Positions 1,381 through 39,429 of a DNA stretch of 64,000 nt are shown here, in pieces. The notes under the pieces are model-generated. The model saw only the letters and a program-made list of their open reading frames with translations. It was not told where the DNA came from and made no database searches. The position numbers and the translations under genes are program-made. The stretch's first letter is position 1, and every line of letters starts with the position of its first letter. Source of the DNA: Selaginella moellendorffii (taxonomy: Eukaryota; Plantae; Lycopodiophyta); NCBI RefSeq assembly GCF_000143415.4, contig NW_003314288.1, positions 696,642-760,641 of the forward strand, read 5' to 3'.

Positions 1381-3900
1381 ATGACTAAGGAGGAACATGA
1401 GATGCATGTGAGGCAAATGTTGCCACTATTGAGGGAGAACAAGCTGTATTCTAAACTGTCAAAGCGTGAGTTCTTCTTGGAGGAGATCACATATCTCGGA
1501 CATGTGGTGCCACGAGATGGTGTGCGGGAATATCCTCAAAAGACTCAGATAATCGTTGACTAGCTTGTTCCCCTTACTATGCATGGGTTTCCTTGGCATG
1601 GTAGGAGTCTTTTGCCGGTTTGTGAAGGACTTCTCCTTGATTGCTGCTCCTTTGATGGATATTCTTCAAAACACCACCAAGCATGCTAAGTTGGTGTGGG
1701 GTGAAAGTGTCAAGAAGCGTTTGAGCAGTTAAAGCAGTCATGTATATTCTACAGATATTTGCTTGTGATAAGCCACTTGTGGTAGAAGGCCAAAGCTCAT
1801 GCTATGGAGTCTATGCGTTCAGAGGTTATGGCTCATGAGTCCTTTTCTCTTTCTGATCCTAGTGAGGCCATGGGTGTCAGTGTGGACCAAGGAGAGAATG
1901 TATCTACTCGTGTTCTAGCTGACACTACTGTCACTAAGCTTTCTGAAGGAGTGAAGAAGAATTGTATCAACTCATCTGAGCTGTACAGTTGTTTGTGCAA
2001 TGAGTTGTGAATAGCCAAGTGCTCAGTGTCCTCTTTGACTCTGGTGCTACGCATACTTTCATTAACAAGGCTAGTGATGAGGGTATAGGAGCTGTCTTGG
2101 TGCAAGACTGCTGTCCTATTGCCTACATAAGCCACAAGTTTGACGCAACTTAGTTGAACTGCCAACTCGGGTGGTAGTTGTTGCAGTCAAAGAGTGGAGG
2201 CATTATCTATATGGTTTGGATTTTTCATGTGGATAACTTTACCACTTGTCACTCTTTTCACTCGCCAGATGGAGCTTTGAGGCCGGCTAGCTCATTGACT
2301 GGAGTTTTTGCAGGAAATGGATGTGCAGACTCCAAATCACCAGAGGGGTTTAAGGTGACAAAAACCGATTTCCCCAGGGATTCCGGAGTAAAAATCAAAG
2401 GGTAATTTTGACCACAGATTACTCATGAATTCGGAAGATTGATGTTTAAAGCAAATTTGCTAGGTTTTCCAAGATCTACAACTTTTCTTTAAGACAATTT
2501 TCCTGTTTCTAAAAGGAGTAGTCAGTAAAGGTGGTTGTTTCTCCATTGTCTAGGATGGTGAACTCTATCTCATTTGGGAAGCTCTCCAGTGGTTTGCTGG
2601 ATGAAATTAAGGAGCTTGCTGACTTCGACTCCTTTGTAATGAAGGCACATGCAGTTGTTTTGAAGGGGGATGCCTCTTCCAATACAATTGTGCTTCCTTC
2701 GATGTATGAGATGGTTTCCTAGTCAAGAGGAATCGGGCTATGGTTCCTAGAGATGATGTTCTAATGCAGTAGATTCTGTAAGAGTGTCTGTTGCACCAAG
2801 TGCAGGACATCAAGGATGTGTGTTTTGGTAGAGACGCATTTATTTTGGCCTAGAATGAAGTCAGGTGTTGATAAGTATGTGCACAGTTGTTAGACCAGCC
2901 AGGCAGTCACAATGGATTGTCAGAAGCATGAAGGTCTCTACTATAGTTAACCTCAGTGGAAGTGGGATAGCATTTTCTATGAGTTTCATAGTAGGCGCTG
3001 TAAGGCAATGATGCTATCTGGGTTGTTGTGGATTGTGTGATGAAGTTGGCTCACTTCTTCCTTGTGAAGACGAATGCTAAGGCTTTTGACCTTGCTCAGC
3101 TGTATTTCTCTATGCTGCTTGAGGATGTTGTAAGTGATTGGGATCCCACGTTCACTTTGGTGTTTTTGCAAACGGTGTTCTAGAAGCTTGAGACAAAGTT
3201 GAGCATGAGCATCCACAGTTATATGGACAAACAAAACGAGTTAATTAGGTGCTGGAAGACATGCTGAGATCGTTTGTTGGTCATCTGAAGAGGCAAGGTA
3301 TTTGGGAGAAGTACCTGCCTTTGTTAGAGATTGCCCATAACTGTGCCTTCCATTTGGCTATTGAGATGGCTTTGTTTATGGCAATGTATGGCTTTCAACC
3401 TCAGTCCCCTGTTGGTATGAACTTGGCTTCTCTTAAGGTGCACCAGGCAAAGGAGTTGGCTGATGAGCATCATCAACACAAGCAGTTTCAGGTTGGAGAC
3501 AAGGTTTTCCTTTGGTTGTCTGAAGCTCAGTGAGCTCTTCAAGGTGGAGGTAGTTCTAAGTTGTCACCATAGTACTGTGGGCCTTGGATTATTCTCAAAC
3601 GAGTTGGAGACCTTGCCTATCAACTAGATTTGCCTAGTGCTGTGCATCCCGTCTTCTATGTAGGAAGTTGAAGGCGTGTTTGCATTCTGGTAATATCTTG
3701 GACCAGTCTGTGATCAAGATTCCAGAGATAGATGTTTGAAGGTTGGCCCTACTTGTGTGTTATAGCAACGGCTAGCGCGCGCACATCGTACAACTTGGAG
3801 AGAGTTACTTGTTCAGTGGAATGGTTAAAATTCATATGATGCTATGGGAAGCTGGGATGATGTTGCTTCCTAATTTTGAGTATGACTTGGATGACATTCT
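1381..3900 (+). mobile_element. Fragmented second Ty3/gypsy (RT end, integrase C-terminus, chromodomain-like tail) mixed with unrelated DNA
   Basis: KEEHEMHVRQMLPLLRENKLYSKLSK...ITYLGHVV (RT). LEDMLRSFV...WEKYLPLLEIAHN...FQVGDKVFL (integrase). YLVQW-like motif near 3807. Confidence 0.7.
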
Positions 3901-4029
3901 AGAGGAAGAGGAGAAGTAGTCGCTTGCTCCTATCCTTTCTTTCTTTTCTGACCCTGTTGATGGCTGGAGGTGTTGTGTCACGTGAGACAGTTAGTGGTTT
4001 TGTTAGCAGGATGCTTTGCTAGCTTCTCT

Positions 4030-5620
4030 CTCCTCAGCTACTGTTCATCATAGTTGGAGCAGAGGGGAAAATGTCACCATATTTCGTGATGAACGAGCTG
4101 ATTCTGGACCTAGGTCTCTGATCAAAGAGCCAAATACCAACTGCAAATTTGCATGGGAAGGTGTTCAAGCATCTCCACGGGGTTTTTATTGCATAGAATA
4201 CACAGAGTTTTGTGAACTGTGAGTCAATCACCAACAGGGATGCTGTCCTGCACAAGAAGCCAGCTTACCTTAGCTTCCACCAGTGTCTTCCACATGTTCA
4301 CAATGTACTTCCGATTCTTCAACTTCCGCATATGCTTGGTGTCAATTTTATCCATCAAAAGCTCTCTGCCATGCTTAGACCTGCACATAAAAAAAGACAC
4401 ACTGAACTCATTACCTTCCCAGGATAACTGAGGCGGATTCTATATAGGATCAGATATAGGTACTCCCCAAACTAGTGTATTGCAGAGCATTCTCCCAGTT
4501 GAACCTTAGGATCCAGTTCAGTGTATTTCCCTCTCTGATGTATCGTCCTGATCCTTTTACCGAAGGCCATCCTGGGAACTGGGACCTCCTCGGGAACTAC
4601 ACATGGAAACAGTGCACCACTGTTATGGGGATAAAAAACAATACCTTGAGGTGATGGGGTTGTTTCCATAACAAAGATGATTTGAGTCTCAGCACCATCA
4701 AGCATTATCCAATCACGAACCTATGATAACTTCAGTTTGTAAAGCAAGATGAAGGTGATCACAAGCAATGCTGCCTTAAGCTTTGATGTGGAGTTTTCAT
4801 CCTGGGTTGTAATGGGTTGTCATGAGGCCATCCGATGAGCAGGGTTTGCTCCAAGTGGACGTTAAACAAATACCTGACTTTACCTTTTTCATTGTATCAT
4901 CTGCTGAGGAAGAAAAACAAGATCCCAACAAGAACCTTGCTGTAAGTGATGGCTTTCTAGCTCTTTGTAGATCCAATAAGTCTTTGATCGAAGCTCCCAC
5001 ATTTCTATGCCACCTAGGCCAAAAACCTCTACCCAAGCCTGGAGCTGAATAATCACCTATATACTGTTGATTACTGTTCTTACGCGCTACGTTGAAGAAC
5101 AAGCGATCAGCTAATGCCTCTGTCAGATGGTCTGGTTCTTTCTGACTTAACCTGGGTAGGAGTGTGACTTCCATATCTTCAACATCTCTTTTGCTATTCC
5201 ATCCTAGACCTTCTTTGTGTTGAGAGGAGCAGTGCCAATTGATTCCTTGTTTCTAGTTACCACTCTGTTTAGGCAAGATCTTCTGCAGCTGAGCTCTGAA
5301 GAGGAGGTGCCAGCTCTGGTTTCGTGAATATAAACCTGACACAAGCACTTTGAATAGAAGAGCTTTGGATTGAATTCCTGGGTGTGGCACATTCCAAATA
5401 ACTGAATTCCACTCTACTTTTTCCCAGACTTTGCACCTGCTGGAGTTTCTAAAGTTTCTACATATGTTGTTGGTGATCAAGTGTTGGTGAGTTATCGGGT
5501 GTTGAGGATCCAAGGTTTTTGCTGCGTAGGTCCTTATCACATCGTCCAACAAGTTGGTCCACAAATCTATGTGGTGACACTCAATGCACAACATCAAGAG
5601 AAGATCCATGTGAAGCGGTT
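4030..5620 (-). mobile_element. Non-LTR (LINE-like) retrotransposon remnant
   Basis: Minus-strand remnants with a zf-RVT-like pattern (W...K.SWLL...C.LC....E.LEHL...C) near 4140-4310 and W-rich C-terminal pieces. Heavily decayed. Confidence 0.4.
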
Positions 5621-7806: not shown

Positions 7807-10800
7807 ATGCGTGCGGCGCTAGGGTTTGTGTGGTGTGTGTCATTTCTCAACAATCTCATGGAGTGGAAAACGTTTTTCAGGGATCCCACTTTCTGGTGGG
7901 ACAACAGGTTCAAGAAGAAAAACAAGTTCTTCTCAGAGTCCTACCCGGATTTCAAACATGTTTCTACCGGAGAGAGCCTGTGGATCGCCAACAGGAAAAC
8001 ACCGACCTGGGTCTCTGCAAAACTCGAGTCGCTCGCTGACCCAGCTGTAGGTAAGGCCACCACGGCTCGCTACAAATCTCCACATACCCCACCTGTAGCT
8101 GGTGATGAACCGGTGAGTTTAGGGAGGCTGATACACCGCGTGAGAGACTCAGCTGAGAGCAGATCCCTTTCTTTGGGAAAACAAGCCCATGAAGCTGTGC
8201 TCAAGAGTGATGAGCACAAAAGCAACATCTACTTGTTGACGGGATTGATCGATATGTACTGCAAGTGTGGCGAGCTTAAGGAGGCTCGCAAGATTTTCGA
8301 CTCCATGGGAACCCGGAGTGTTGCGTCCTACAACGCGATCATCCAGGGCTGCGGCTCGAACGGGCAAGCTGAACTTGCTCTGGAGTACTACTCTGCTCTG
8401 AGAGCTTGTACCACCATTCAACCCAACGATCGGACACATGTCGCGGTGATCAGCGCCTGCTCCAGACTTGCTACCGAATCCAGCGAGAAGAGGGAGAGAG
8501 CTCTACGCATCGGGATGGAGATCCGTTCAATGCTGAGCAAGGAGAAGAAACAGCTAGATCTGTTCGTGGCGACTTGCCTGGTAGACATGTACTGCAAGTG
8601 TGGCGAGCTTGAGGAGGCTTGCAAGATTTTCCACTCCATGGGAACTCGGAGTGTTGTGTCCTACACCGCGATCATCCAGGGCTGCAACACGAACGGGCGA
8701 GCTGAACTTGCTCTGGAGTACTACTGTGCCCTGAGAGCTTGTACCACCATTCAACCCAACAATCGGACTCATGTCGCGGTGATCAGCGCCTGCTCCACAC
8801 TTGCTACCGAATCCAGCGAGAAGAGGGAGAGAGCTCTACGCATCGGGATGGAGATCCATTCAATGCTGAGCAAGGAGAAGAAACAGCTAGATCTGTTCGT
8901 GGCGACTTGCCTGGTAGACATGTACTGCAAGTGTGGGGAGCTTGAGGAGGCTCGCAAGATTTTCGACTCCATGAGAACTCGGAGTGTTGTGTCCTACAAC
9001 GCGATCATCCAGGGCTGCGGCTCGAACGGGCAAGCTGAACTTGCTCTGGAGTACTACTCTGCCCTGAGAGCTTGTACCACCATTCAACCCAACGATCGGA
9101 CACATGTCGCGGTGATCAGCGCCTGCTCCAGACTTGCTACCGAATCCAGCGAGAAGAGGGAGAGAGCTCTACGCATCGGGATGGAGATCCATTCAATGCT
9201 GAGCAAGGAGAAGAAACAGCTAGATCTGTTCGTGGCGACTTGCCTGGTAGACATGTACTGCAAGTGTGGCGAGCTTGAGGAGGCTCGCAAGATTTTCCAC
9301 TCCATGGGAACTCGGAGTGTTGTGTCCTACAACGCGATCATCCAGGGCTGCGGCTCGAACGGGCAAGCTGAACTTGCTCTGGAGTACTACTCTGCCCTGA
9401 GAGCTGATAACACCATTCAACCCGACGATTGGACACATGTCACGGTGATCAGCGCCTGCTCCACACTTGCTACCGAATCCAGCGAGAAGAGGGAGAGAGC
9501 TCTACGCATTGGGATGGAGATCCATTCAATGCTGAGCAAGGAGAAGAAACAGCTAGATCTGTTCGTGGCGAATTGTCTGGTAGACATGTACTGCAAGTGT
9601 GGCGAGCTTGAGGAGGCTTGCAAGATTTTCCACTCCATGGGAACTCGGAGTGTTGTGTCCTACACCGCGATCATCCAGGGCTGCAACACGAACGGCCGAG
9701 CTGAACTTGCTCTGGAGTACTACTCTGCCCTGAGAGCTGATAACACCATTCAACCCGACGATCGGACTCATGTCGTGGCGATCAGCGCCTGCTCCACACT
9801 TGCTACTGAATCCAGTGAGAAGAGGGAGAGAGCTCTACGCATTGGGATGGAGATCCATTCAATGCTGAGCAAGGAGAAGAAACAGCTAGATCTGTTCGTG
9901 GCGAATTGCATGGTAGACATGTACTGCAAGTGTGGCGAGCTTGAGGAGGCTCGCAAGATTTTCCACTCCATGGGAACTCGTAGTGTTGTGTCCTACACCG
10001 CGATCATCCAGGGCTGCAACACGAACGGGCGAGCTGAACTTGCTCTGGAGTACTACTCTGCCCTGAGAGCTGATAACACCATTCAAGCTGATGCTTGCAC
10101 CTACACCTGCGTCCTTGTTGCTTGCGGGAGTGTGATGGCGATCAAGCTCGGGAGGGAGATTCACCAGCTGGCGAAGCATAAAGGGCTGCTGAAAAACAAT
10201 CCAGTTCTGGGCTCCAGCCTGGTGAGCTTCTACGGCAAATGCGGCGATGTTGATTCTGCTCAGGAAGCGTTTGACGAGTGCCGAGCTCGGGACGACACGG
10301 GTCTCTGGAACTCTCTCATACAGGCTTACACTCTCCAGGGCCGATCGATCGAGGCCTTGGAGCGTTTCTATTCCATGACTCAGGAGGAGGGCTGTAAAGC
10401 TGACGATGTGAGTTTTGTCTCGGTGTTGAACGCTTGCAGCCATGGTGGTCTGGTCGGGAAAGGAAGGCAGCTTCTGGATGAAATGCCCAAGCAGTATGGA
10501 GTCAAGCCACGTCTGGAGCATTATGTGTGCCTGATTGATATGCTCGGGCGAGCTAACCTCCTTGACGAAGCTGTGAGAGTTCTCAGAGCCATGCCTTTTG
10601 AACCGGATGCAGTGGTTTGGACGTCCCTGCTCGGAGCCTGCCGGAAGTGGAAGAATTACACGATCGGCAAACTCGCGTTTGAGCGTCTTGTGGAGATGGA
10701 TCCCAAGAGTGACACGCCCTACGCATTGATGGCCAATATATTTGGAAACCTGGGGATGCTCAGTGAAAGGGCTGCTGTTGTGGAGAGAAAGAGAGGTGAA

Positions 10801-11229
10801 GGCAGCTTCAGGGAGCCCGGGAGAAGCTGGTGGACGGATGTTAGCTCAGGAAAAGTGCATTCTTTTTCTGTCGGGGATAGGAGTCACTCACAGAGCGACG
10901 AGATTGCGGCCAAGCTCAAGCAATTGTTGCTGAGAATGAAAGAGGAGGGGTACGCGAGTGCTGTGATCAACGTTCTAAAAGACATACCCGAGGAAGAGAA
11001 AGAGGATCACCTGTGCGGCCACAGTGAGAAGCTTGCGCTGGGGTGTGCCCTGGTGAACTCGCACCAGAAGGAGACCATCAGAATTGTGAAAAATCTCCGA
11101 GTTTGTGATGATTGCCATGCGGCCACTGCTCTCATCTCTAAGCTGGAAAAAAGGCTAATCATCTGCAAAGATGCCAGTCGGGTTCATGTGTTCCAGGATG
11201 GCAGATGTTCCTGTGACAACTACTTTTGA
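7807..11229 (+). CDS. PLS-class PPR-E1-E2-DYW RNA-editing factor (DYW:WW type) with N-terminal OSB-type PDF motif
   Basis: Intact 1140-aa ORF. aa 20-73 match the PDF motif (WxxFF...WWDNR..K....YPDFKH..TGESLW.....PxWV). About 23 P/L/S motifs, then E1/E2, PGRSWWTD box, HSEKLA, CDDCH, ending SCDNYF. Confidence 0.95.
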   Translation: MRAALGFVWCVSFLNNLMEWKTFFRDPTFWWDNRFKKKNKFFSESYPDFKHVSTGESLWIANRKTPTWVSAKLESLADPAVGKATTARYKSPHTPPVAGDEPVSLGRLIHRVRDSAESRSLSLGKQAHEAVLKSDEHKSNIYLLTGLIDMYCKCGELKEARKIFDSMGTRSVASYNAIIQGCGSNGQAELALEYYSALRACTTIQPNDRTHVAVISACSRLATESSEKRERALRIGMEIRSMLSKEKKQLDLFVATCLVDMYCKCGELEEACKIFHSMGTRSVVSYTAIIQGCNTNGRAELALEYYCALRACTTIQPNNRTHVAVISACSTLATESSEKRERALRIGMEIHSMLSKEKKQLDLFVATCLVDMYCKCGELEEARKIFDSMRTRSVVSYNAIIQGCGSNGQAELALEYYSALRACTTIQPNDRTHVAVISACSRLATESSEKRERALRIGMEIHSMLSKEKKQLDLFVATCLVDMYCKCGELEEARKIFHSMGTRSVVSYNAIIQGCGSNGQAELALEYYSALRADNTIQPDDWTHVTVISACSTLATESSEKRERALRIGMEIHSMLSKEKKQLDLFVANCLVDMYCKCGELEEACKIFHSMGTRSVVSYTAIIQGCNTNGRAELALEYYSALRADNTIQPDDRTHVVAISACSTLATESSEKRERALRIGMEIHSMLSKEKKQLDLFVANCMVDMYCKCGELEEARKIFHSMGTRSVVSYTAIIQGCNTNGRAELALEYYSALRADNTIQADACTYTCVLVACGSVMAIKLGREIHQLAKHKGLLKNNPVLGSSLVSFYGKCGDVDSAQEAFDECRARDDTGLWNSLIQAYTLQGRSIEALERFYSMTQEEGCKADDVSFVSVLNACSHGGLVGKGRQLLDEMPKQYGVKPRLEHYVCLIDMLGRANLLDEAVRVLRAMPFEPDAVVWTSLLGACRKWKNYTIGKLAFERLVEMDPKSDTPYALMANIFGNLGMLSERAAVVERKRGEGSFREPGRSWWTDVSSGKVHSFSVGDRSHSQSDEIAAKLKQLLLRMKEEGYASAVINVLKDIPEEEKEDHLCGHSEKLALGCALVNSHQKETIRIVKNLRVCDDCHAATALISKLEKRLIICKDASRVHVFQDGRCSCDNYF
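8251..10086 (+). repeat. About 5.5 tandem copies of a 333-bp unit encoding one S-P-L PPR triplet (31+36+44 aa)
   Basis: DMYCKCGEL recurs at about 8251, 8584, 8917, 9250, 9583 and 9916. Units are near-identical at DNA level. Confidence 0.97.
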
Positions 11230-12019
11230 AAACATGTCAGTGCTCTTTCTTGCAGTTATCCCTGGTTTTAAACCCACCGTGAGTCGAGCAGAAACATGGG
11301 CCGCTGAGTGAGCATGCCTCGTCAAAGTACCGCCGTCAACCTGAACTTCACGGAGAAAAAAATAACATTTAAAAGTTAAAACTATGCAAAAGGAGGATGA
11401 CACGTTGTCTTAAATTTAAATTTCTTTTTGGTAGCAGAATCGGCTGGCAAGTCTTCATACTAGGGCTTATTATCTGAATCTGGGTGCTCTGTTTTGGGGC
11501 ACCTTTTGGCAGGTTTAGTCAGCATTCCTACCCAAACTTGAAGGGGTCATGCGAGACGGCAAGTTTGGCCACACGTATTCATCATGCCGCAAGCCGCCAT
11601 CACCTTGCTCCCAGAACATGAGGCTGCACTTGCTATCAGCAAAGACTTTGGGTTTGTGCTCCTAGAGCACGTTGAAGACGTGTGGAAGCTGGTGATGACA
11701 GCATTTGTTTCTTGCAACATACTCACGAGTTCCTTGGTGACATCTTCCTTCCAGATTTTTTGAGCTTGTCGTGAGTGGTGACCTGCTTGCTCTCTCCTGT
11801 GACGACTTCTTCCAGCCTCTGGTGCCCAACCTCAAGGCTCTCTTGTGGATGGAGCTAGCCCTACACAGTGTGTGTGTGTATCAACCAGCAGATGCACAAA
11901 TTGATGTCGATGCTGGTGCCAATGATGGTGCCGATGGAGTTGCGGAGGTTTGGACCATGGAAGATGTTGTTCACGAGCTGCAAGCCCTTAATAAAAATTA
12001 GCAAGAGATGTAAGACAAG

Positions 12020-27109: not shown

Positions 27110-28570
27110 TATCTATGGAAACGCTGGTTGTCTACGTGCGGTGTGGGCATTTGGAGGAATCGAGAAGGATCTTGCACTCCTCCTGCTCCACATCAGTGCA
27201 ATGCTAGGCGTGGCAATCCAGATTCTCAAGACCATGCTGGTGAGAGTGAGCTGTGGAAGTCTCTCATGAGCTCTTGTTGAAAGTGGGAAGCAGTGGTGTG
27301 GAAAGCTTGCATTTGAGGCGCGGGTGGAGATGGGCTCATTGCAGTAAGGTGATTTCCCATTCCCTTCCTTTTGTATCCTATCTCCCTCGTGGCCTCCCGA
27401 CATGCTTCATATGTTCTCCTGTCTGTGTTCCATATGTTATCCTCTCCGCTTGCGAAGCATTGCACAGCATGTTGCTGGAGCTGGGTCTCAGCCCATTCGT
27501 TGATGGCTAGCATTTACGAAGGCTTCATTGGATGTTGATACAGAGAATTAAGTTTAAAGACAATTGGCCCACTTTTATGATGGGCTTAATCTATGTTGAC
27601 TGGATTGTTCTTTGCAAAGCATGTATGCAAGGCGATTTTACAAGGAAATATATCAAATCTTCCTCAAAGTCAATGCCATAATCTGTCAAGAACCAAATCC
27701 TTGGAGAGCTTTAGGAATTAATATATGCATAATGAAGGATAGTTAAGTAATTTGATGATGAGAAGTTTGACATATGTTATCAAATATATTATCTAGCATA
27801 GCAATCAGGGATGCTCAACATCCCAAACAATTCTCCCAATTGAAAATAAGAAATATCACAAGTGCCATTTCCTACTCATCCATTCCCTTTGAAAACTTTC
27901 TTTCTATTCTGAAGGGTGGAGTTTTATATATAATGTTGTTTTATAGGGCAATATTGCTTCTTCAATGGCAACTAGCACTTGTTCAATGTTTCGTGACCAA
28001 TCTATTCCCTTCTCTTCCAATATCATGGAATATAAGTATATGAAATGTTTCAAAACTAACATATTGGAGTACAATCTTAATCATTCTTAAACTCTTAGGA
28101 ATACTAGACTCAACCAGAGATATAATTCAGTTCCCTTTAATCTTCCAGTCTAGCATCATTCCAAATCCAGGATTGGTATTCAGATTAGAATATTGCTAGC
28201 CTTTTGAGACAAGTATAATAGTTGTTTTGAATCATTAGGATCATCCTTTAGTGATTTTAATCTACATTGAGTTATAATTTAAATAGATTGCTACTTTGTC
28301 CTCGCTAGATGGAGAAAAAGTGTTATATAAGCTCATATGTTTTATGCATCAAGTATTCTTACAAATCAAATATTTATTTTAATAGCTTATTTTCTGCAGG
28401 CTATTTGCAAAAGAACACCCACAAGGTGTATGACCTGTTTAGTATTTGCACACATATCAATTTTGTTAAATTTATATTCTTTATTTTTCCACAATACCTA
28501 TCTTTTATGGCTTCAGTTAAGTTATAGTCCTTTGAGTATTTCTTCAATTTAGGCACTATATTTTTGGTTT
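27110..28570 (+). repeat. Deleted duplicate of the 36576 PPR locus and its 3' flank
   Basis: 27120-27172 matches about 36613-36666. About 27177-27199 and 27500-28570 match about 38210-39415. The PPR body is missing. Confidence 0.85.
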
Positions 28571-36575: not shown

Positions 36576-37991
36576 ATGGCGCGCGTAGCTCCCAAGGCGT
36601 CTTGGTGGGATAAAACGCTGGTTATCTACGCGCGGTGTGGGCATTTGGAGGAATCGAGAAGGATCTTTGATGCATTGCCGGCCAAGAACATCGCGTCGTG
36701 GACGGCGCTCGCGACCGCGTATGCCGAGAGTGGGCATCCGGGGGAGGCCAAGGCAGCGTTCGATCGAATGGCGGTGTGGGACGTAGTTTCCTCCACTGCG
36801 ATGGTCAAGGCGCTGGGCGATTGCGGGCGGATTGGATCGAGCAAGGCGGTGTTTGATACGATGCCCGAAAGGAACTGCAAGACGTGGGCGACGCTGCTGC
36901 GGGGATTTGCTCGGGGCGGAGAGATTGGGCGAGCGAGAGAGGTGCTGGATCGGATGCCCGAGACGAATGTGGTAGCGTGGACGATCCTCGTGCAGGGTTT
37001 CGCGCAGCGCGGGCGAGTGGGCGATGCGAAGGCCGCGTTTGATTCCATGCCCGAGAAGAACAGCATCACTCGCGCGGTGATACTCGTCATGTTTGCGGAG
37101 AATGGATTCATGGAGGAGGCGGAGGATGTCTTCCAGGAGATTGTCCACCGAAACGCGATCCTCTGGGGGGCGATGCACTGCTGCTATGCCCAAAATGGGG
37201 ATTTAATTCAAGCCAAGAGTTTTTTTGATAGGATGCCTCATCACAGCGTACTTTCGTGGACGATTATGATCAAGTCATACGCGAAAAACGGTGATGCTGA
37301 TCAAGGAAAACAAATGTTTGAGGAAATGCCACACAGAGATCTTGTTTCATGGAACGCGATAATCGCTGTTTATGCCCAGAGAGGTCGTTTCAAAGAGGCG
37401 ATCCGGGCGTTTTCTTTGGTTTGCTGCTGGGATTCCTATTCATGGAACACAATTCTAGTGGTATATGCTCTAGATGCAAATATTCGTGATGCTAAGAAAT
37501 CGTTCGATGAGATGCCAACTTGGAACTTGGTCTCCTGGAACACGATTCTTGCAGCATATGCCCAGACCGGGCATGCGTATTCTGCGATCCAGCTCTTTTG
37601 GGCGATGTTTCTTCACGGCTTTGACCCCGACAAGGCAGCGTTTGCCATCGTTTTGTCGGCGTGTAGCCATCTGGGGCTCGTCAAGGAAGCAGTAAGCTAC
37701 TTCACGGCAATGAGCTTTGACAATGGATTGGATCCTTCGCAAGACCACTACACCTGCATTGTTGATGCTCTCGGACGACTAGGGCGATTGAAAGAGGCCG
37801 AGGATGTCCTGGAGAATATGCCTTTGCCAGCAGATGGAGTTGCATGGGCAACGTTTCTTACCGCGTGCAAAAACCACGGGGAGATGAATCGAGGGATGCA
37901 TGCTGCGGAATTTACGTGCCAGTCCAGCCTTGTGAGTGATGCATTGCCTTATGTGATGCTGGAAAAAATCTTCAGAGCAGTTCAGACTTGA
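36576..37991 (+). CDS. PLS/SS-rich PPR protein with E domain (no DYW)
   Basis: 471-aa ORF with tandem 31-aa S motifs (FDRMP...VSW), P2-L2-S2 (VLSACSHLGL, HYTCIVDALGRLG), E1 and truncated E2. Confidence 0.9.
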   Translation: MARVAPKASWWDKTLVIYARCGHLEESRRIFDALPAKNIASWTALATAYAESGHPGEAKAAFDRMAVWDVVSSTAMVKALGDCGRIGSSKAVFDTMPERNCKTWATLLRGFARGGEIGRAREVLDRMPETNVVAWTILVQGFAQRGRVGDAKAAFDSMPEKNSITRAVILVMFAENGFMEEAEDVFQEIVHRNAILWGAMHCCYAQNGDLIQAKSFFDRMPHHSVLSWTIMIKSYAKNGDADQGKQMFEEMPHRDLVSWNAIIAVYAQRGRFKEAIRAFSLVCCWDSYSWNTILVVYALDANIRDAKKSFDEMPTWNLVSWNTILAAYAQTGHAYSAIQLFWAMFLHGFDPDKAAFAIVLSACSHLGLVKEAVSYFTAMSFDNGLDPSQDHYTCIVDALGRLGRLKEAEDVLENMPLPADGVAWATFLTACKNHGEMNRGMHAAEFTCQSSLVSDALPYVMLEKIFRAVQT

Positions 37992-39429
37992 TTCTTCACT
38001 GTTTTGATGTGTTGACCCAAACATCGATCGTTGATATCCAGCAATTCCTCGACCCGCCCCATCCCCCATGGATGGAGAGCGGGACGCACAGAGATTGGGC
38101 ATAGGAGAGTCTTCAGAAATCTATCTGGAGTGTTAAGTGCAGTGGGTTTTCTATAGCCAGCAACGCAAGATCCAATGCTGCTGTTGTGAATTTGAGCAGC
38201 AGCACTGCGCTCCTCCTGCTCCACATCAGTGCCACCTCTCTGAGTTCCATATGTTATCATCTCCTCTGGGCCTCAGCCCATTCTTGATATTTACGAAGGC
38301 TCCATTGGATGTTGATACAGAGAATTAAATTTAAAGACAATTGGCCCACTTTTATGATGGGCTTAATCTATGTTGAATGGATTGCTCTTTGCAAAGCATG
38401 TATGCAAGGCGATTTTACAAGGAAATTTATCAAATCTTCTGCAAAGTCAATGCCATACCTGTCAAGAACCAAATCCTTGGAGAGCTTTAGGAATTAGTAT
38501 AGGGATATATAGGGATGCATAATGAAGGATAGTTAAGTAATTTGATGATGAGAAGTTTGACATGGCACAAGCAGAGTGTGCCTCTCAAGGCATCCAAATC
38601 TATGTTCTAGCTCCCATTTGGAAATAAGAAATATTACAAGTGCCATTTCCTACTCATCCATTCCCTTCGAAAACTTTCTTTCTATTCTGCAGGGTGGAGT
38701 TTTACATATAATGTTGTTGTCACAAATAATTATAAAGCAAGTATAAGGGAATATTGCTTCTTCAATGGCAACTAGCACTTTGTAAAATGTTTTGTGACCA
38801 ACTATTCCCTTCTCTTCCAATATCATGGAATATAAGTATATGAAAATTTTCAAAACTATCATGTTGGAGTACAATCTTAATCATTCTTAAACTCTTAGGA
38901 ATACTAGACTCAACTCTTCAGTTCCCTTTAATCTTTCAGTCTAGCATCATTCCAAATCCAGGATTGGTATTCAGATTTAGAATATTGCACTAGCCTTTTG
39001 AGACAAGTTGTTTTGAATCCTTAGGATCATCCTCTAGTGATTTCAATCTACATTGAGTTATAATTTAAATAGATTGCTACTTTGTCCTCTATGACATGCT
39101 AGATGGAGAAAAAGTGTTATATAAGATCATATTTTTTATGCACTCCCCAAGTATTCTTTACAATTCAAATATTTATTTTGATAGATTTTTTTTCTGCAGG
39201 CTATTTGCAAAAGAACACCAAACATCTGATTGCATAAATAGACGATGATGGTCACATTAGCTTATGGTTTCCAGACATGCAAATGATTCTTTCACAAGGT
39301 GTATGACCTATTTGCACACATATCATATTTTTATATTCTTTATTTTTCCACAATACCTATTTTTTATAGCTTCAGTTTTGAGTATTTCTTCAATGTAGGC
39401 ACTATATTTTTGGTTTTTTTAATAAACAC

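What the first reader, a model, noticed from the sequence alone, without database searches (positions are those of the whole stretch)
7807..11229. PDF-PPR-DYW fusion: an organellar ssDNA-binding module joined to a programmable cytidine deaminase
Seen: aa 20-73 (7864-8025) read WKTFFRDPTFWWDNRFKKKNKFFSESYPDFKHVSTGESLWIANRKTPTWVSAKL, in one uninterrupted ORF with a PLS array, E1/E2 and a DYW domain whose zinc and catalytic residues (HSE, CDDC) are intact. Established: this pattern is the PDF motif of plant OSB (organellar single-stranded DNA-binding) proteins, where it mediates ssDNA binding. PPR-DYW proteins normally carry only a transit peptide ahead of the repeats. Inference: the motif could tether the editor to nucleoids or transcription bubbles for co-transcriptional editing, add non-specific nucleic-acid affinity, or, more speculatively, direct deamination to ssDNA. 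I do not know of a described PDF-PPR-DYW architecture but cannot check the literature.
Basis: partly seen in the sequence, partly recalled or inferred. Interest (0 to 1): 0.88.

Follow-up and report, generated by a model that had tools for sequence, protein, structure and literature searches.

The report
OSB-type PDF motif on PPR-DYW editor
A spikemoss gene for an organelle RNA-editing enzyme (PPR-DYW) really does begin with the small "PDF" nucleic-acid-binding motif otherwise known only from plant organellar ssDNA-binding (OSB) proteins, and the same unreported combination turns out to be common in mosses, liverworts, lycophytes and ferns.

Summary
Window 7807-11229 (+) is one open 1140-aa frame with four parts:
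- a PDF motif at aa 19-76
- a disordered Pro-rich linker
- a PLS-type PPR array that includes a 333-bp x5.5 tandem duplication
- E1/E2 motifs and an intact DYW deaminase (HSE, CDDCH)

The N-terminal motif is a genuine OSB-type PDF motif. A phmmer search gives E 1e-16 to 1e-23 against proteins named OSB1/2/3. A PDF HMM scores it 76 bits. Its AlphaFold model (pLDDT 92) matches only the PDF regions of Arabidopsis OSB1-4 (TM 0.71-0.77).

The gene is not unique. Near-identical paralogues exist in Selaginella moellendorffii. All 82 further PPR proteins that two homology searches retrieved carry an N-terminal PDF, and 46 of them also match the DYW domain. They come from Sphagnum, the liverwort Calypogeia, Diphasiastrum, Adiantum and Ceratopteris.

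Full-text searches found no paper describing this architecture. PDF is not in Pfam, so domain surveys miss it.

Contigs from probable RNA libraries cover the PDF-coding region contiguously with the first PPR. Their 5' end departs from the window at 7833, so the true start codon is unsettled.

The function is inferred: an accessory single-strand nucleic-acid-binding module on the 5' side of the PPR footprint. A nucleoid-tether role is possible. ssDNA deamination is unsupported. Five other first-stage notes report the same fusion elsewhere in this genome.

The parts
7807..11229 (+). Complete ORF (1140 codons plus stop) of the PDF-PPR-E-DYW protein
   Evidence: Paralogous loci L001 and L002 keep the same frame open, at 1029 aa and 1009 aa.
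7858..7860 (+). Second in-frame ATG (M18, MEWK...). It is the likely start if the main RNA lacks 7807-7832.
   Evidence: Contigs from probable RNA libraries match only from 7833 onward. The paralogue model P0152 and locus L002 start here.
7861..8034 (+). PDF motif (aa 19-76). The P-D-F signature is at 7945-7953. There is a 4-residue insertion in the loop before it.
   Evidence: HMM 76 bits, E 6e-26. All near-invariant PDF positions are present. The AF2 model has pLDDT 92 and matches only Arabidopsis OSB1-4 PDF regions.
8035..8118 (+). Pro/Ala/Thr-rich linker (about aa 77-104), predicted disordered
   Evidence: AF2 model of aa 1-300: pLDDT below 50 for aa 80-98, and PPR helices start at aa 105.
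8119..10653 (+). PLS-class PPR array
   Evidence: Pfam PPR, PPR_1, PPR_2 and PPR_3 hits. Helical repeats start at aa 105 in the AF2 model.
8254..10086 (+). Tandem array of a 333-bp unit (5.5 copies, 95% identical) inside the PPR array. Each unit is one 111-aa S+P+L triplet.
   Evidence: TRF. Copy number differs between loci. RefSeq models excise it as an intron.
10654..10938 (+). E1/E2 (Pfam E_motif aa 950-1008, Eplus aa 1017-1044), including the PG box (PGRSWW, 10816-10833)
10948..11226 (+). DYW cytidine deaminase domain: HSE at 11020-11028, CDDCH at 11104-11118, C-terminal CSCDNYF at 11206-11226
   Evidence: Pfam E 1.3e-30. Aligns to 9KFX and 7O4E. Coordinates.
7833..8253 (+). Stretch covered by one abundant 482-483-nt contig in three probable RNA runs. 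It includes the whole PDF-coding region and the first PPR.
   Evidence: read laying: depth 574-1117, against about 0-3 upstream of 7833. The contig carries a 32-nt 5' piece that is absent from the window, L001 and L002.

Best explanation
The locus encodes a PLS-class PPR-E-DYW organelle C-to-U RNA-editing factor. It belongs to a recently duplicated, multi-copy family in Selaginella. Its N-terminus carries one OSB-type PDF motif as an independently folded module of about 58 aa, joined to the PPR array by a disordered linker of about 25 aa.

Shown:
- the motif is homologous in sequence and predicted fold to the PDF motifs of OSB1-4
- the deaminase and PPR parts are intact
- the PDF-coding region lies on the same contig as the first PPR in probable RNA libraries
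- the PDF-PPR(-DYW) layout recurs in mosses, a liverwort, lycophytes and ferns
- the residues invariant in OSB PDFs are also invariant in the PPR-associated PDFs

Inferred mechanism: PPR arrays bind RNA in parallel, N-terminus to the 5' side, and DYW acts just 3' of the footprint. The PDF module therefore sits at the 5' edge of the bound RNA. There it most likely supplies sequence-independent affinity for single-stranded nucleic acid, through aromatic and basic residues as in OSB1. That would help capture the substrate or keep it unfolded. In lineages that lack MORF helpers, it may stabilise the editing complex.

My confidence in the identity and architecture is about 0.95. My confidence in the mechanistic role is about 0.45.
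For: - Motif identity: phmmer hits to named OSBs (P0029 OSB2-like 2.7e-23, P0052 OSB1 7.7e-18, P0065 OSB3 1.8e-16). PDF HMM 76 bits. Foldseek hits only A. thaliana OSB1-4 PDF regions, at probability 1.00 and TM 0.71-0.77.
- Editor intact.
- Separate module plus flexible linker.
- Recurrence: Selaginella paralogues P0004 and P0151-154, and a second lineage P0093/P0155. All 82 further PPR proteins retrieved have an N-terminal PDF, and 46 of them match DYW.
- Conservation: W4, P11, W14, D16, R18, K21, P31-D32-F33, L42-W43, P49 and W51 are each present in at least 98% of 41 non-redundant PPR-associated PDFs and at least 85% of 357 others.
- Not a gene-model fusion: it is a single ORF here and in L001 and L002. 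In Calypogeia the second half of the PDF shares an exon with PPR-DYW.
- Expression.
- PDF is needed for ssDNA binding by OSB1, and OSB1/2 prefer ssDNA over dsDNA or RNA, as summarised in reviews (PMC6963530, PMC4166229).
Against: - No binding or editing assay exists for any PDF-PPR protein.
- Recombinant OSB1/2 preferred ssDNA to RNA (PMC4166229), which argues against a simple RNA-binding role.
- Only 17 residues, or none if M18 is the start, precede the motif here, so organelle targeting of this copy is unproven. Homologues have transit-peptide-like presequences, with the PDF starting at a median of aa 42.
- The RNA contigs diverge from the window upstream of 7833. They may come from a near-identical paralogue or allele (2 differences in 421 nt) rather than from this copy.
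- A single transcript spanning PDF to DYW was not demonstrated, because the contigs break at the tandem repeat.
- RefSeq models splice out the repeat array.
Confidence: 0.6

Rival explanations
1. Nucleoid or ssDNA tether. The PDF motif binds single-stranded DNA in organelle nucleoids or transcription bubbles, as it does in OSB proteins. This concentrates the editing factor where nascent RNA emerges, giving co-transcriptional editing.
For: OSB1/2 bind ssDNA in preference to RNA, and the PDF motif is reported sufficient for that (reviews). PPR-associated PDFs keep every OSB-invariant residue. The flexible linker would let the module reach a different strand from the PPR-bound RNA.
Against: There are no localisation or binding data. 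In most homologues only about 10-25 residues separate the PDF from the first PPR repeat, which suggests it acts on the same strand as the PPR array. Nothing is known about co-transcriptional editing in these lineages.
Confidence: 0.2
2. Protein-protein or assembly module. The PDF motif mediates oligomerisation or docking to another factor rather than nucleic-acid binding. It would act as a built-in helper, analogous to MORF/RIP partners in seed plants.
For: AtOSB2 is reported to be a tetramer (PMC6963530). The conserved positions are mostly buried-type aromatics (W, F, L, P), compatible with a structural or interaction scaffold. The PDF-PPR proteins I found are all from lineages outside seed plants. 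From general knowledge, MORFs are a seed-plant feature.
Against: The only functional data on PDF concern ssDNA binding. The absence of PDF-PPR from seed plants was not tested exhaustively: only the best 150 of 486 phmmer hits were listed, and the other searches depend on shared words.
Confidence: 0.12
3. The motif is not part of the working protein in this copy. Translation starts later, the N-terminus is cleaved off on import, or this copy is a decaying member of a young multigene family.
For: The 5' end is unsettled: RNA contigs do not cover ATG 7807. The paralogue P0151 has the first half of its PDF out of frame. Differences between the window and L001/L002 within the PDF are too few (1 synonymous, 0 non-synonymous) to show selection.
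Against: The next Met after M18 is aa 150, inside the PPR array. The motif is in frame and intact in the window, L001, L002 and four of the five RefSeq paralogue models. It is conserved at 57% identity with the distinct Selaginella gene P0093, and it is conserved across land-plant phyla.
Confidence: 0.05
4. The PDF motif redirects the DYW deaminase to single-stranded DNA, making it a programmable ssDNA C-to-U deaminase.
For: Only the ssDNA preference of OSB PDFs.
Against: The E1/E2-DYW module is a standard RNA-editing type, 50% or more similar to solved RNA editors. The PDF is at the end of a protein of over 1000 aa opposite to the active site. The architecture is common in plants whose organelles show RNA editing, not DNA editing.
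Confidence: 0.03

Closest known systems
[quoted passage not shown] 2006, as reviewed in PMC6963530 and PMC4166229)
   Same: The 50-60-aa PDF motif is shared. It has the same invariant W/P/W/D/R/K/PDF/LW/P/W positions, the same predicted small alpha/beta fold (TM 0.71-0.77), and 35-44% identity to the Arabidopsis PDF regions.
   Different: There is no SSB-like OB fold. The motif is single and N-terminal, followed by PPR-E-DYW, rather than C-terminal to an OB fold. The protein is therefore not an OSB family member. The 2026 OSB survey (PMC13393729) required both OB and PDF, so it excluded such proteins.
PLS-class PPR-E-DYW RNA-editing factors (e.g. Physcomitrium PPR56/PPR65, Arabidopsis OTP86; solved 9KFX, 7O4E)
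   Same: PLS repeats, E1/E2, the PG box, and a DYW deaminase with HxE and CxDCH. The C-terminal region aligns end to end at E 6e-49.
   Different: It carries an extra folded nucleic-acid-binding-type module ahead of the repeats. The terminal tripeptide is NYF instead of DYW. The array contains 5.5 nearly identical 111-aa triplets.
Catalogued PPR domain fusions (RRM-PPR, MORF-PPR, RanBP2-Znf-PPR; kingdom-wide survey PMC13386178)
   Same: The concept is the same: a second RNA or nucleic-acid-related module fused to a PPR editing factor.
   Different: PDF is not among the fusions listed there. PDF has no Pfam model, so Pfam-based surveys cannot see it.
PDF-PPR(-DYW) proteins in public proteomes, annotated only as hypothetical or PPR proteins (e.g. 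Sphagnum fallax BDL97_19G044000, Calypogeia fissa P0227, Diphasiastrum complanatum O6H91_07G017300, S. moellendorffii XP_024536012.1)
   Same: Same architecture. The PDF is followed within about 10-25 aa by the first PPR, and many end in a canonical DYW.
   Different: Those proteins have a transit-peptide-like presequence of about 40-110 aa. The window protein has at most 17 aa, a longer disordered linker and a 4-aa loop insertion in the PDF.

Membership tests
OSB-type PDF motif | Motif of about 50 aa with the conserved Pro-Asp-Phe signature and flanking conserved W, D, R, K, LW and P.W positions | tested here: met
   Alignment of 95 instances: the window has all 12 invariant or near-invariant positions. 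HMM 76 bits, E 6e-26.
OSB-type PDF motif | Significant similarity to the PDF regions of proteins named OSB1-4 | tested here: met
   phmmer E 2.7e-23 (OSB2-like), 7.7e-18 (OSB1) and 1.8e-16 (OSB3). Foldseek matches the PDF regions of Q9SX99, Q8GXH3, Q8GWJ4 and Q9FYJ2 at probability 1.00.
OSB-type PDF motif | Binds single-stranded DNA | not testable with these tools
   Needs EMSA or fluorescence anisotropy with the recombinant motif.
OSB protein family | Central SSB-like OB-fold domain with the PDF motif(s) C-terminal to it | tested here: not met
   Pfam finds no SSB or OB hit. The PDF is N-terminal and is followed by PPR repeats.
PLS-class PPR-DYW editing factor | Array of P, L and S type PPR motifs | tested here: met
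   Pfam PPR families with 14-16 stretches. The 111-aa unit parses as S(31)+P(36)+L(44); this is my reading of the sequence.
PLS-class PPR-DYW editing factor | E1/E2 motifs followed by a DYW deaminase with PG box, HxE and CxxCH zinc/catalytic residues | tested here: met
   E_motif, Eplus and DYW_deaminase. Aligned to 9KFX and 7O4E, with HSEKLA and CDDCH conserved.
PLS-class PPR-DYW editing factor | N-terminal organelle transit peptide | tested here: inconclusive
   Only 17 aa precede the PDF, with no acidic residue and one Arg. Homologues have transit-peptide-like presequences, with the PDF starting at a median of aa 42. No targeting predictor was available.
PLS-class PPR-DYW editing factor | Site-specific C-to-U editing activity on organelle RNA | not testable with these tools
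   Needs a heterologous editing assay or a knock-out.

The most novel reading that the evidence does not exclude
The PDF motif is an ancient, so far unrecognised accessory domain of land-plant RNA-editing factors. On this reading it was fused to PLS PPR proteins at or before the divergence of bryophytes and vascular plants, kept in mosses, liverworts, lycophytes and ferns, and lost or replaced in seed plants, where separate MORF helpers took over. It would give the editor a built-in single-strand clamp, or a link between editing and the ssDNA of active nucleoids.
Probability: 0.3. Interest if true: 0.8.

Novelty: new variant of a known kind. Interest (0 to 1): 0.6.

Why it matters
PPR-DYW proteins are the specificity and catalytic units of plant organelle RNA editing, and they serve as templates for designer RNA editors. 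Their N-termini are usually dismissed as transit peptides and are removed in heterologous assays.

A conserved, folded motif of the OSB ssDNA-binding type sits in front of many editing factors of early-diverging land plants. It is invisible to Pfam-based surveys. This has three consequences:
- It points to an overlooked functional component of the editing machinery in lineages without MORF proteins.
- It widens the known biology of the PDF motif beyond OSB proteins.
- It offers a small natural module that could be tested for improving substrate capture in engineered PPR editors.

It also shows that the RefSeq models for this Selaginella family, which cut out the repeat array, probably misrepresent the protein.

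Tried and rejected
- Pfam on aa 1-114: no family.
- The search for homologous proteins on the window protein, region 15-100: 14 candidates, none significant. The word index was too coarse.
- Foldseek against PDB and VIA-align wide search with the PDF model: no match better than E 4 or Z 2.3, so no solved structure tells us the fold's mechanism.
- ESM Atlas look-alikes for aa 15-80: only phage clusters at scores below 0.7, which is chance level.
- The original OSB1 paper (PMC1785405) is not held, so statements on PDF binding come from reviews.
- The 32-nt 5' piece of the RNA contigs is absent from the window, L001 and L002. There is no AG acceptor at 7831-7832, so a simple splice at this locus is rejected. 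Its origin (paralogue, allele or distant exon) stays open.
- Loci for P0205 and P0267 were not on record.
- dN/dS on the PDF between the window and L001/L002: only one synonymous difference, so no power.
- PDF-motif tree: the PPR-associated PDFs group together only weakly (SH-aLRT 84, 62 columns), so one versus several fusion events cannot be decided.
- The idea that the N-terminal motif is a mis-joined neighbouring gene is rejected: it is a single ORF in three loci.
Full report
**1. The observation**

Window 7807-11229 (+) is a single open frame of 1140 codons.

Pfam assigns about 16 PPR motifs, an E motif (aa 950-1008), an E+ motif (aa 1017-1044) and a DYW deaminase (aa 1048-1139, E 1.3e-30). 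It finds nothing for the first 114 residues.

HSE lies at aa 1072-1074 and CDDCH at aa 1100-1104, and the protein ends CSCDNYF. The last 191 residues align end to end with the solved synthetic PPR-DYW 9KFX (E 6e-49) and the OTP86 DYW domain 7O4E (E 5e-29). The editing part is intact.

A 333-bp unit repeated 5.5 times at 95% identity occupies 8254-10086. Each unit is one 111-aa S+P+L triplet.

**2. Is the N-terminal motif a PDF motif?**

Yes. An exhaustive phmmer search of aa 15-100 against 1.84 billion cluster representatives gave 486 proteins at E<=1e-3 and 122 at E<=1e-10. Most are 250-500 aa long and match in 1-4 tandem stretches near their C-termini.

Those that carry names are OSB proteins:
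- 'protein OSB2, chloroplastic-like' (Asparagus, 2.7e-23)
- 'protein OSB1, mitochondrial-like' (Populus, 7.7e-18)
- 'Protein OSB3' (Anthurium, 1.8e-16)

An alignment of 95 instances gives the consensus W..LF..P..W.D.R..K..P..PDFKHK..G..LWL....P.WV..KL. The window has every invariant or near-invariant position. An HMM built from that alignment scores aa 19-76 at 76 bits (E 6e-26). It finds no other copy in the six-frame translation of the window.

An AlphaFold2 model of aa 17-80 is confident (pLDDT 92). In Swiss-Prot AlphaFold models it matches only the PDF regions of Arabidopsis OSB1, OSB2, OSB3 and OSB4 (probability 1.00, TM 0.71-0.77, 35-44% identity).

No solved structure shares the fold. 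The window's motif has a 4-residue insertion in the loop before P-D-F. A 2026 OSB survey reports insertions in this region in Group III OSBs (PMC13393729).

**3. Organism, paralogues and gene model**

The nearest database protein is Selaginella moellendorffii XP_024536012.1 (P0004, 497 aa). Four sister models lie on three scaffolds.

P0004 equals the window protein minus aa 150-754 (the repeat array) and minus a further 39 aa. The underlying loci nevertheless hold uninterrupted ORFs. L001 (GL377592.1) has 1029 aa, one repeat fewer. L002 (GL377722.1) has 1009 aa counted from the Met that corresponds to M18.

The window is about 95-96% identical to L001 at the DNA level, so it is a paralogue or another haplotype or assembly. 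The excised segments have GT..AG ends.

An array of PPR-coding units that stays open in three loci with different copy numbers is far more likely coding than intronic. I could not test this with reads.

**4. RNA evidence**

Three runs labelled 'RNA?' from different studies each hold one 482-483-nt contig. It covers 7833-8253 and runs about 30 nt further, at word depth 574-1117. Upstream of 7833 there is essentially no cover. A DNA-like run covers the whole stretch at depth 4-10.

The PDF-coding region (7861-8034) is therefore present in RNA libraries, on the same contig as the first PPR.

The contig has two differences from the window. It also carries 32 nt at its 5' end that are absent from the window, L001 and L002. 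There is no AG at 7831-7832.

So the RNA may come from a near-identical paralogue or allele with a different upstream region. ATG 7807 may not be in the main transcript. In that case M18 (7858) or a nearby ATG is the start.

The 3' part (10100-11400) is held at 0.71-0.76 of sampled words in many RNA runs, including two runs that also hold the 5' part. A single PDF-to-DYW molecule was not demonstrated.

**5. The architecture is recurrent**

Among the best 150 phmmer hits, five representatives were PPR proteins:
- Selaginella P0004
- Selaginella P0093 (910 aa, PDF at aa 6-62, ends in an E motif)
- Adiantum P0094
- Diphasiastrum P0133
- a transcript-derived P0020 with three PDFs

Two word-indexed searches seeded with P0020 and with Sphagnum P0202 returned 82 further PPR proteins. 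All 82 carry a PDF hit (E 1e-12 to 1e-24) at the N-terminus. Forty-six also match the DYW domain, and most of those end in a canonical ...CSC.DYW.

The retrieved proteins come from:
- Sphagnum: at least 13 loci in S. fallax and 10 in S. magellanicum
- the leafy liverwort Calypogeia fissa
- Diphasiastrum complanatum (5 loci)
- Adiantum
- Ceratopteris

In these proteins the PDF starts at a median of aa 42. The presequence before it is poor in acidic residues and rich in Ser, Thr, Arg and Lys, which is transit-peptide-like. The first PPR follows the PDF within about 10-25 residues.

In Calypogeia an intron splits the PDF, and its second half lies in the same exon as PPR-DYW. The linkage is therefore not an annotation artefact.

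The positions invariant in OSB PDFs are at least as invariant in the PPR-associated PDFs.

A tree of 131 PDF instances places the window's PDF next to that of Selaginella P0093 (SH-aLRT 90). It groups the PPR-associated PDFs only weakly (SH-aLRT 84). One origin is possible but not shown.

Five other first-stage notes report the same fusion elsewhere in this genome. That fits the multi-copy family but is not independent evidence.

**6. Literature**

Full-text searches combining 'PDF motif' or 'PDF domain', OSB, pentatricopeptide, DYW, lycophyte, Selaginella, or the motif's own words found no description of a PDF-PPR protein.

The 2026 kingdom-wide survey of editing-factor fusions lists only MORF, RRM and RanBP2-Znf partners (PMC13386178). 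The 2026 OSB survey kept only proteins with both OB and PDF (PMC13393729).

The library lacks many subscription papers, so this is absence of evidence only.

**7. Anatomy and likely mechanism**

An AlphaFold2 model of aa 1-300 shows three parts:
- a folded PDF (pLDDT 77-89)
- a disordered linker (aa 80-98, pLDDT below 50)
- PPR helices from aa 105 (pLDDT above 90)

It is established knowledge that PPR arrays bind RNA with their N-terminus toward the 5' end, and that DYW deaminates the C four nucleotides 3' of the last repeat's nucleotide. The PDF therefore sits at the 5' edge of the footprint.

Reviews state that the PDF motif is required and sufficient for ssDNA binding by OSB1, and that OSB1/2 prefer ssDNA to dsDNA or RNA.

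My best reading (about 0.45) is an accessory, sequence-independent single-strand binding module that helps to capture the substrate or keep it unfolded.

The rivals are:
- a nucleoid or ssDNA tether for co-transcriptional editing (about 0.2)
- a protein-interaction or assembly module (about 0.12)
- no role in this copy (about 0.05)
- redirecting deamination to ssDNA (about 0.03)

**8. Verdict**

The protein is not an OSB, because it has no OB fold. It is a PPR-DYW editor with an added PDF module.

The architecture is widespread in non-seed land plants yet apparently undescribed. I therefore rate it a new variant of a known kind, of moderate to good interest.

Noticed in passing
window 8254-10086: A 333-bp unit is repeated 5.5 times at 95% identity inside the PPR array. 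Each unit encodes one 111-aa S+P+L triplet. Copy number differs between the window (1140-aa ORF), L001 (1029 aa) and L002 (1009 aa from M18). Position-5 and last-residue code positions vary between copies (N/T; D/N).
   Followed up: partly
L001 6001-9090 (S. moellendorffii GL377592.1) and window 8256-10070, 10222-10338: RefSeq models XP_024536012.1 and its sisters (about 497 aa) remove the whole repeat array, and a further 117 nt, as GT..AG introns. Yet the frame is open through both segments in three loci. The models probably under-represent the protein. This was not checked with reads.
   Followed up: partly
window 7833 (5' boundary of RNA contigs): Abundant contigs from probable RNA runs (depth 574-1117) join 7833 to 32 nt (GTCGAAGGCCAAGTAGCCAATTATATATAT..) found nowhere in the window, L001 or L002. 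There is no AG acceptor at the junction. The depth is unusually high for a PPR gene. The origin of the 32 nt is unexplained.
   Followed up: partly
P0033 (1526 aa, source unknown): A protein with three PDF motifs (aa 191-392) ahead of a kinesin motor domain. It is either another PDF fusion or a merged gene model.
   Followed up: no
P0001 (Kingdonia uniflora KAF6142360.1, 1160 aa): An OSB-like protein with 11-13 PDF motifs and only weak SSB hits. This far exceeds the maximum of five PDFs reported in the 2026 OSB survey.
   Followed up: no
L003 1455-1544 / 1713-4883 (Calypogeia fissa): An intron lies inside the PDF motif of a liverwort PDF-PPR-DYW gene, between ...WWDHRLEKG and SLRYPDFKHK... Comparing this position with OSB gene introns could test exon shuffling as the origin of the fusion.
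   Followed up: no
P0133 aa 47-121, P0267 aa about 75-100 (Diphasiastrum complanatum): Degenerate half-PDF remnants lie upstream of the intact PDF. This suggests that ancestral multi-PDF N-termini are decaying.
   Followed up: no
window about 37150-39220 (-) and 27170-28460 (-): Other stretches of the window match PPR-containing DNA downstream of the L001 gene at 86-95% identity. The PPR family appears to be locally duplicated.
   Followed up: no
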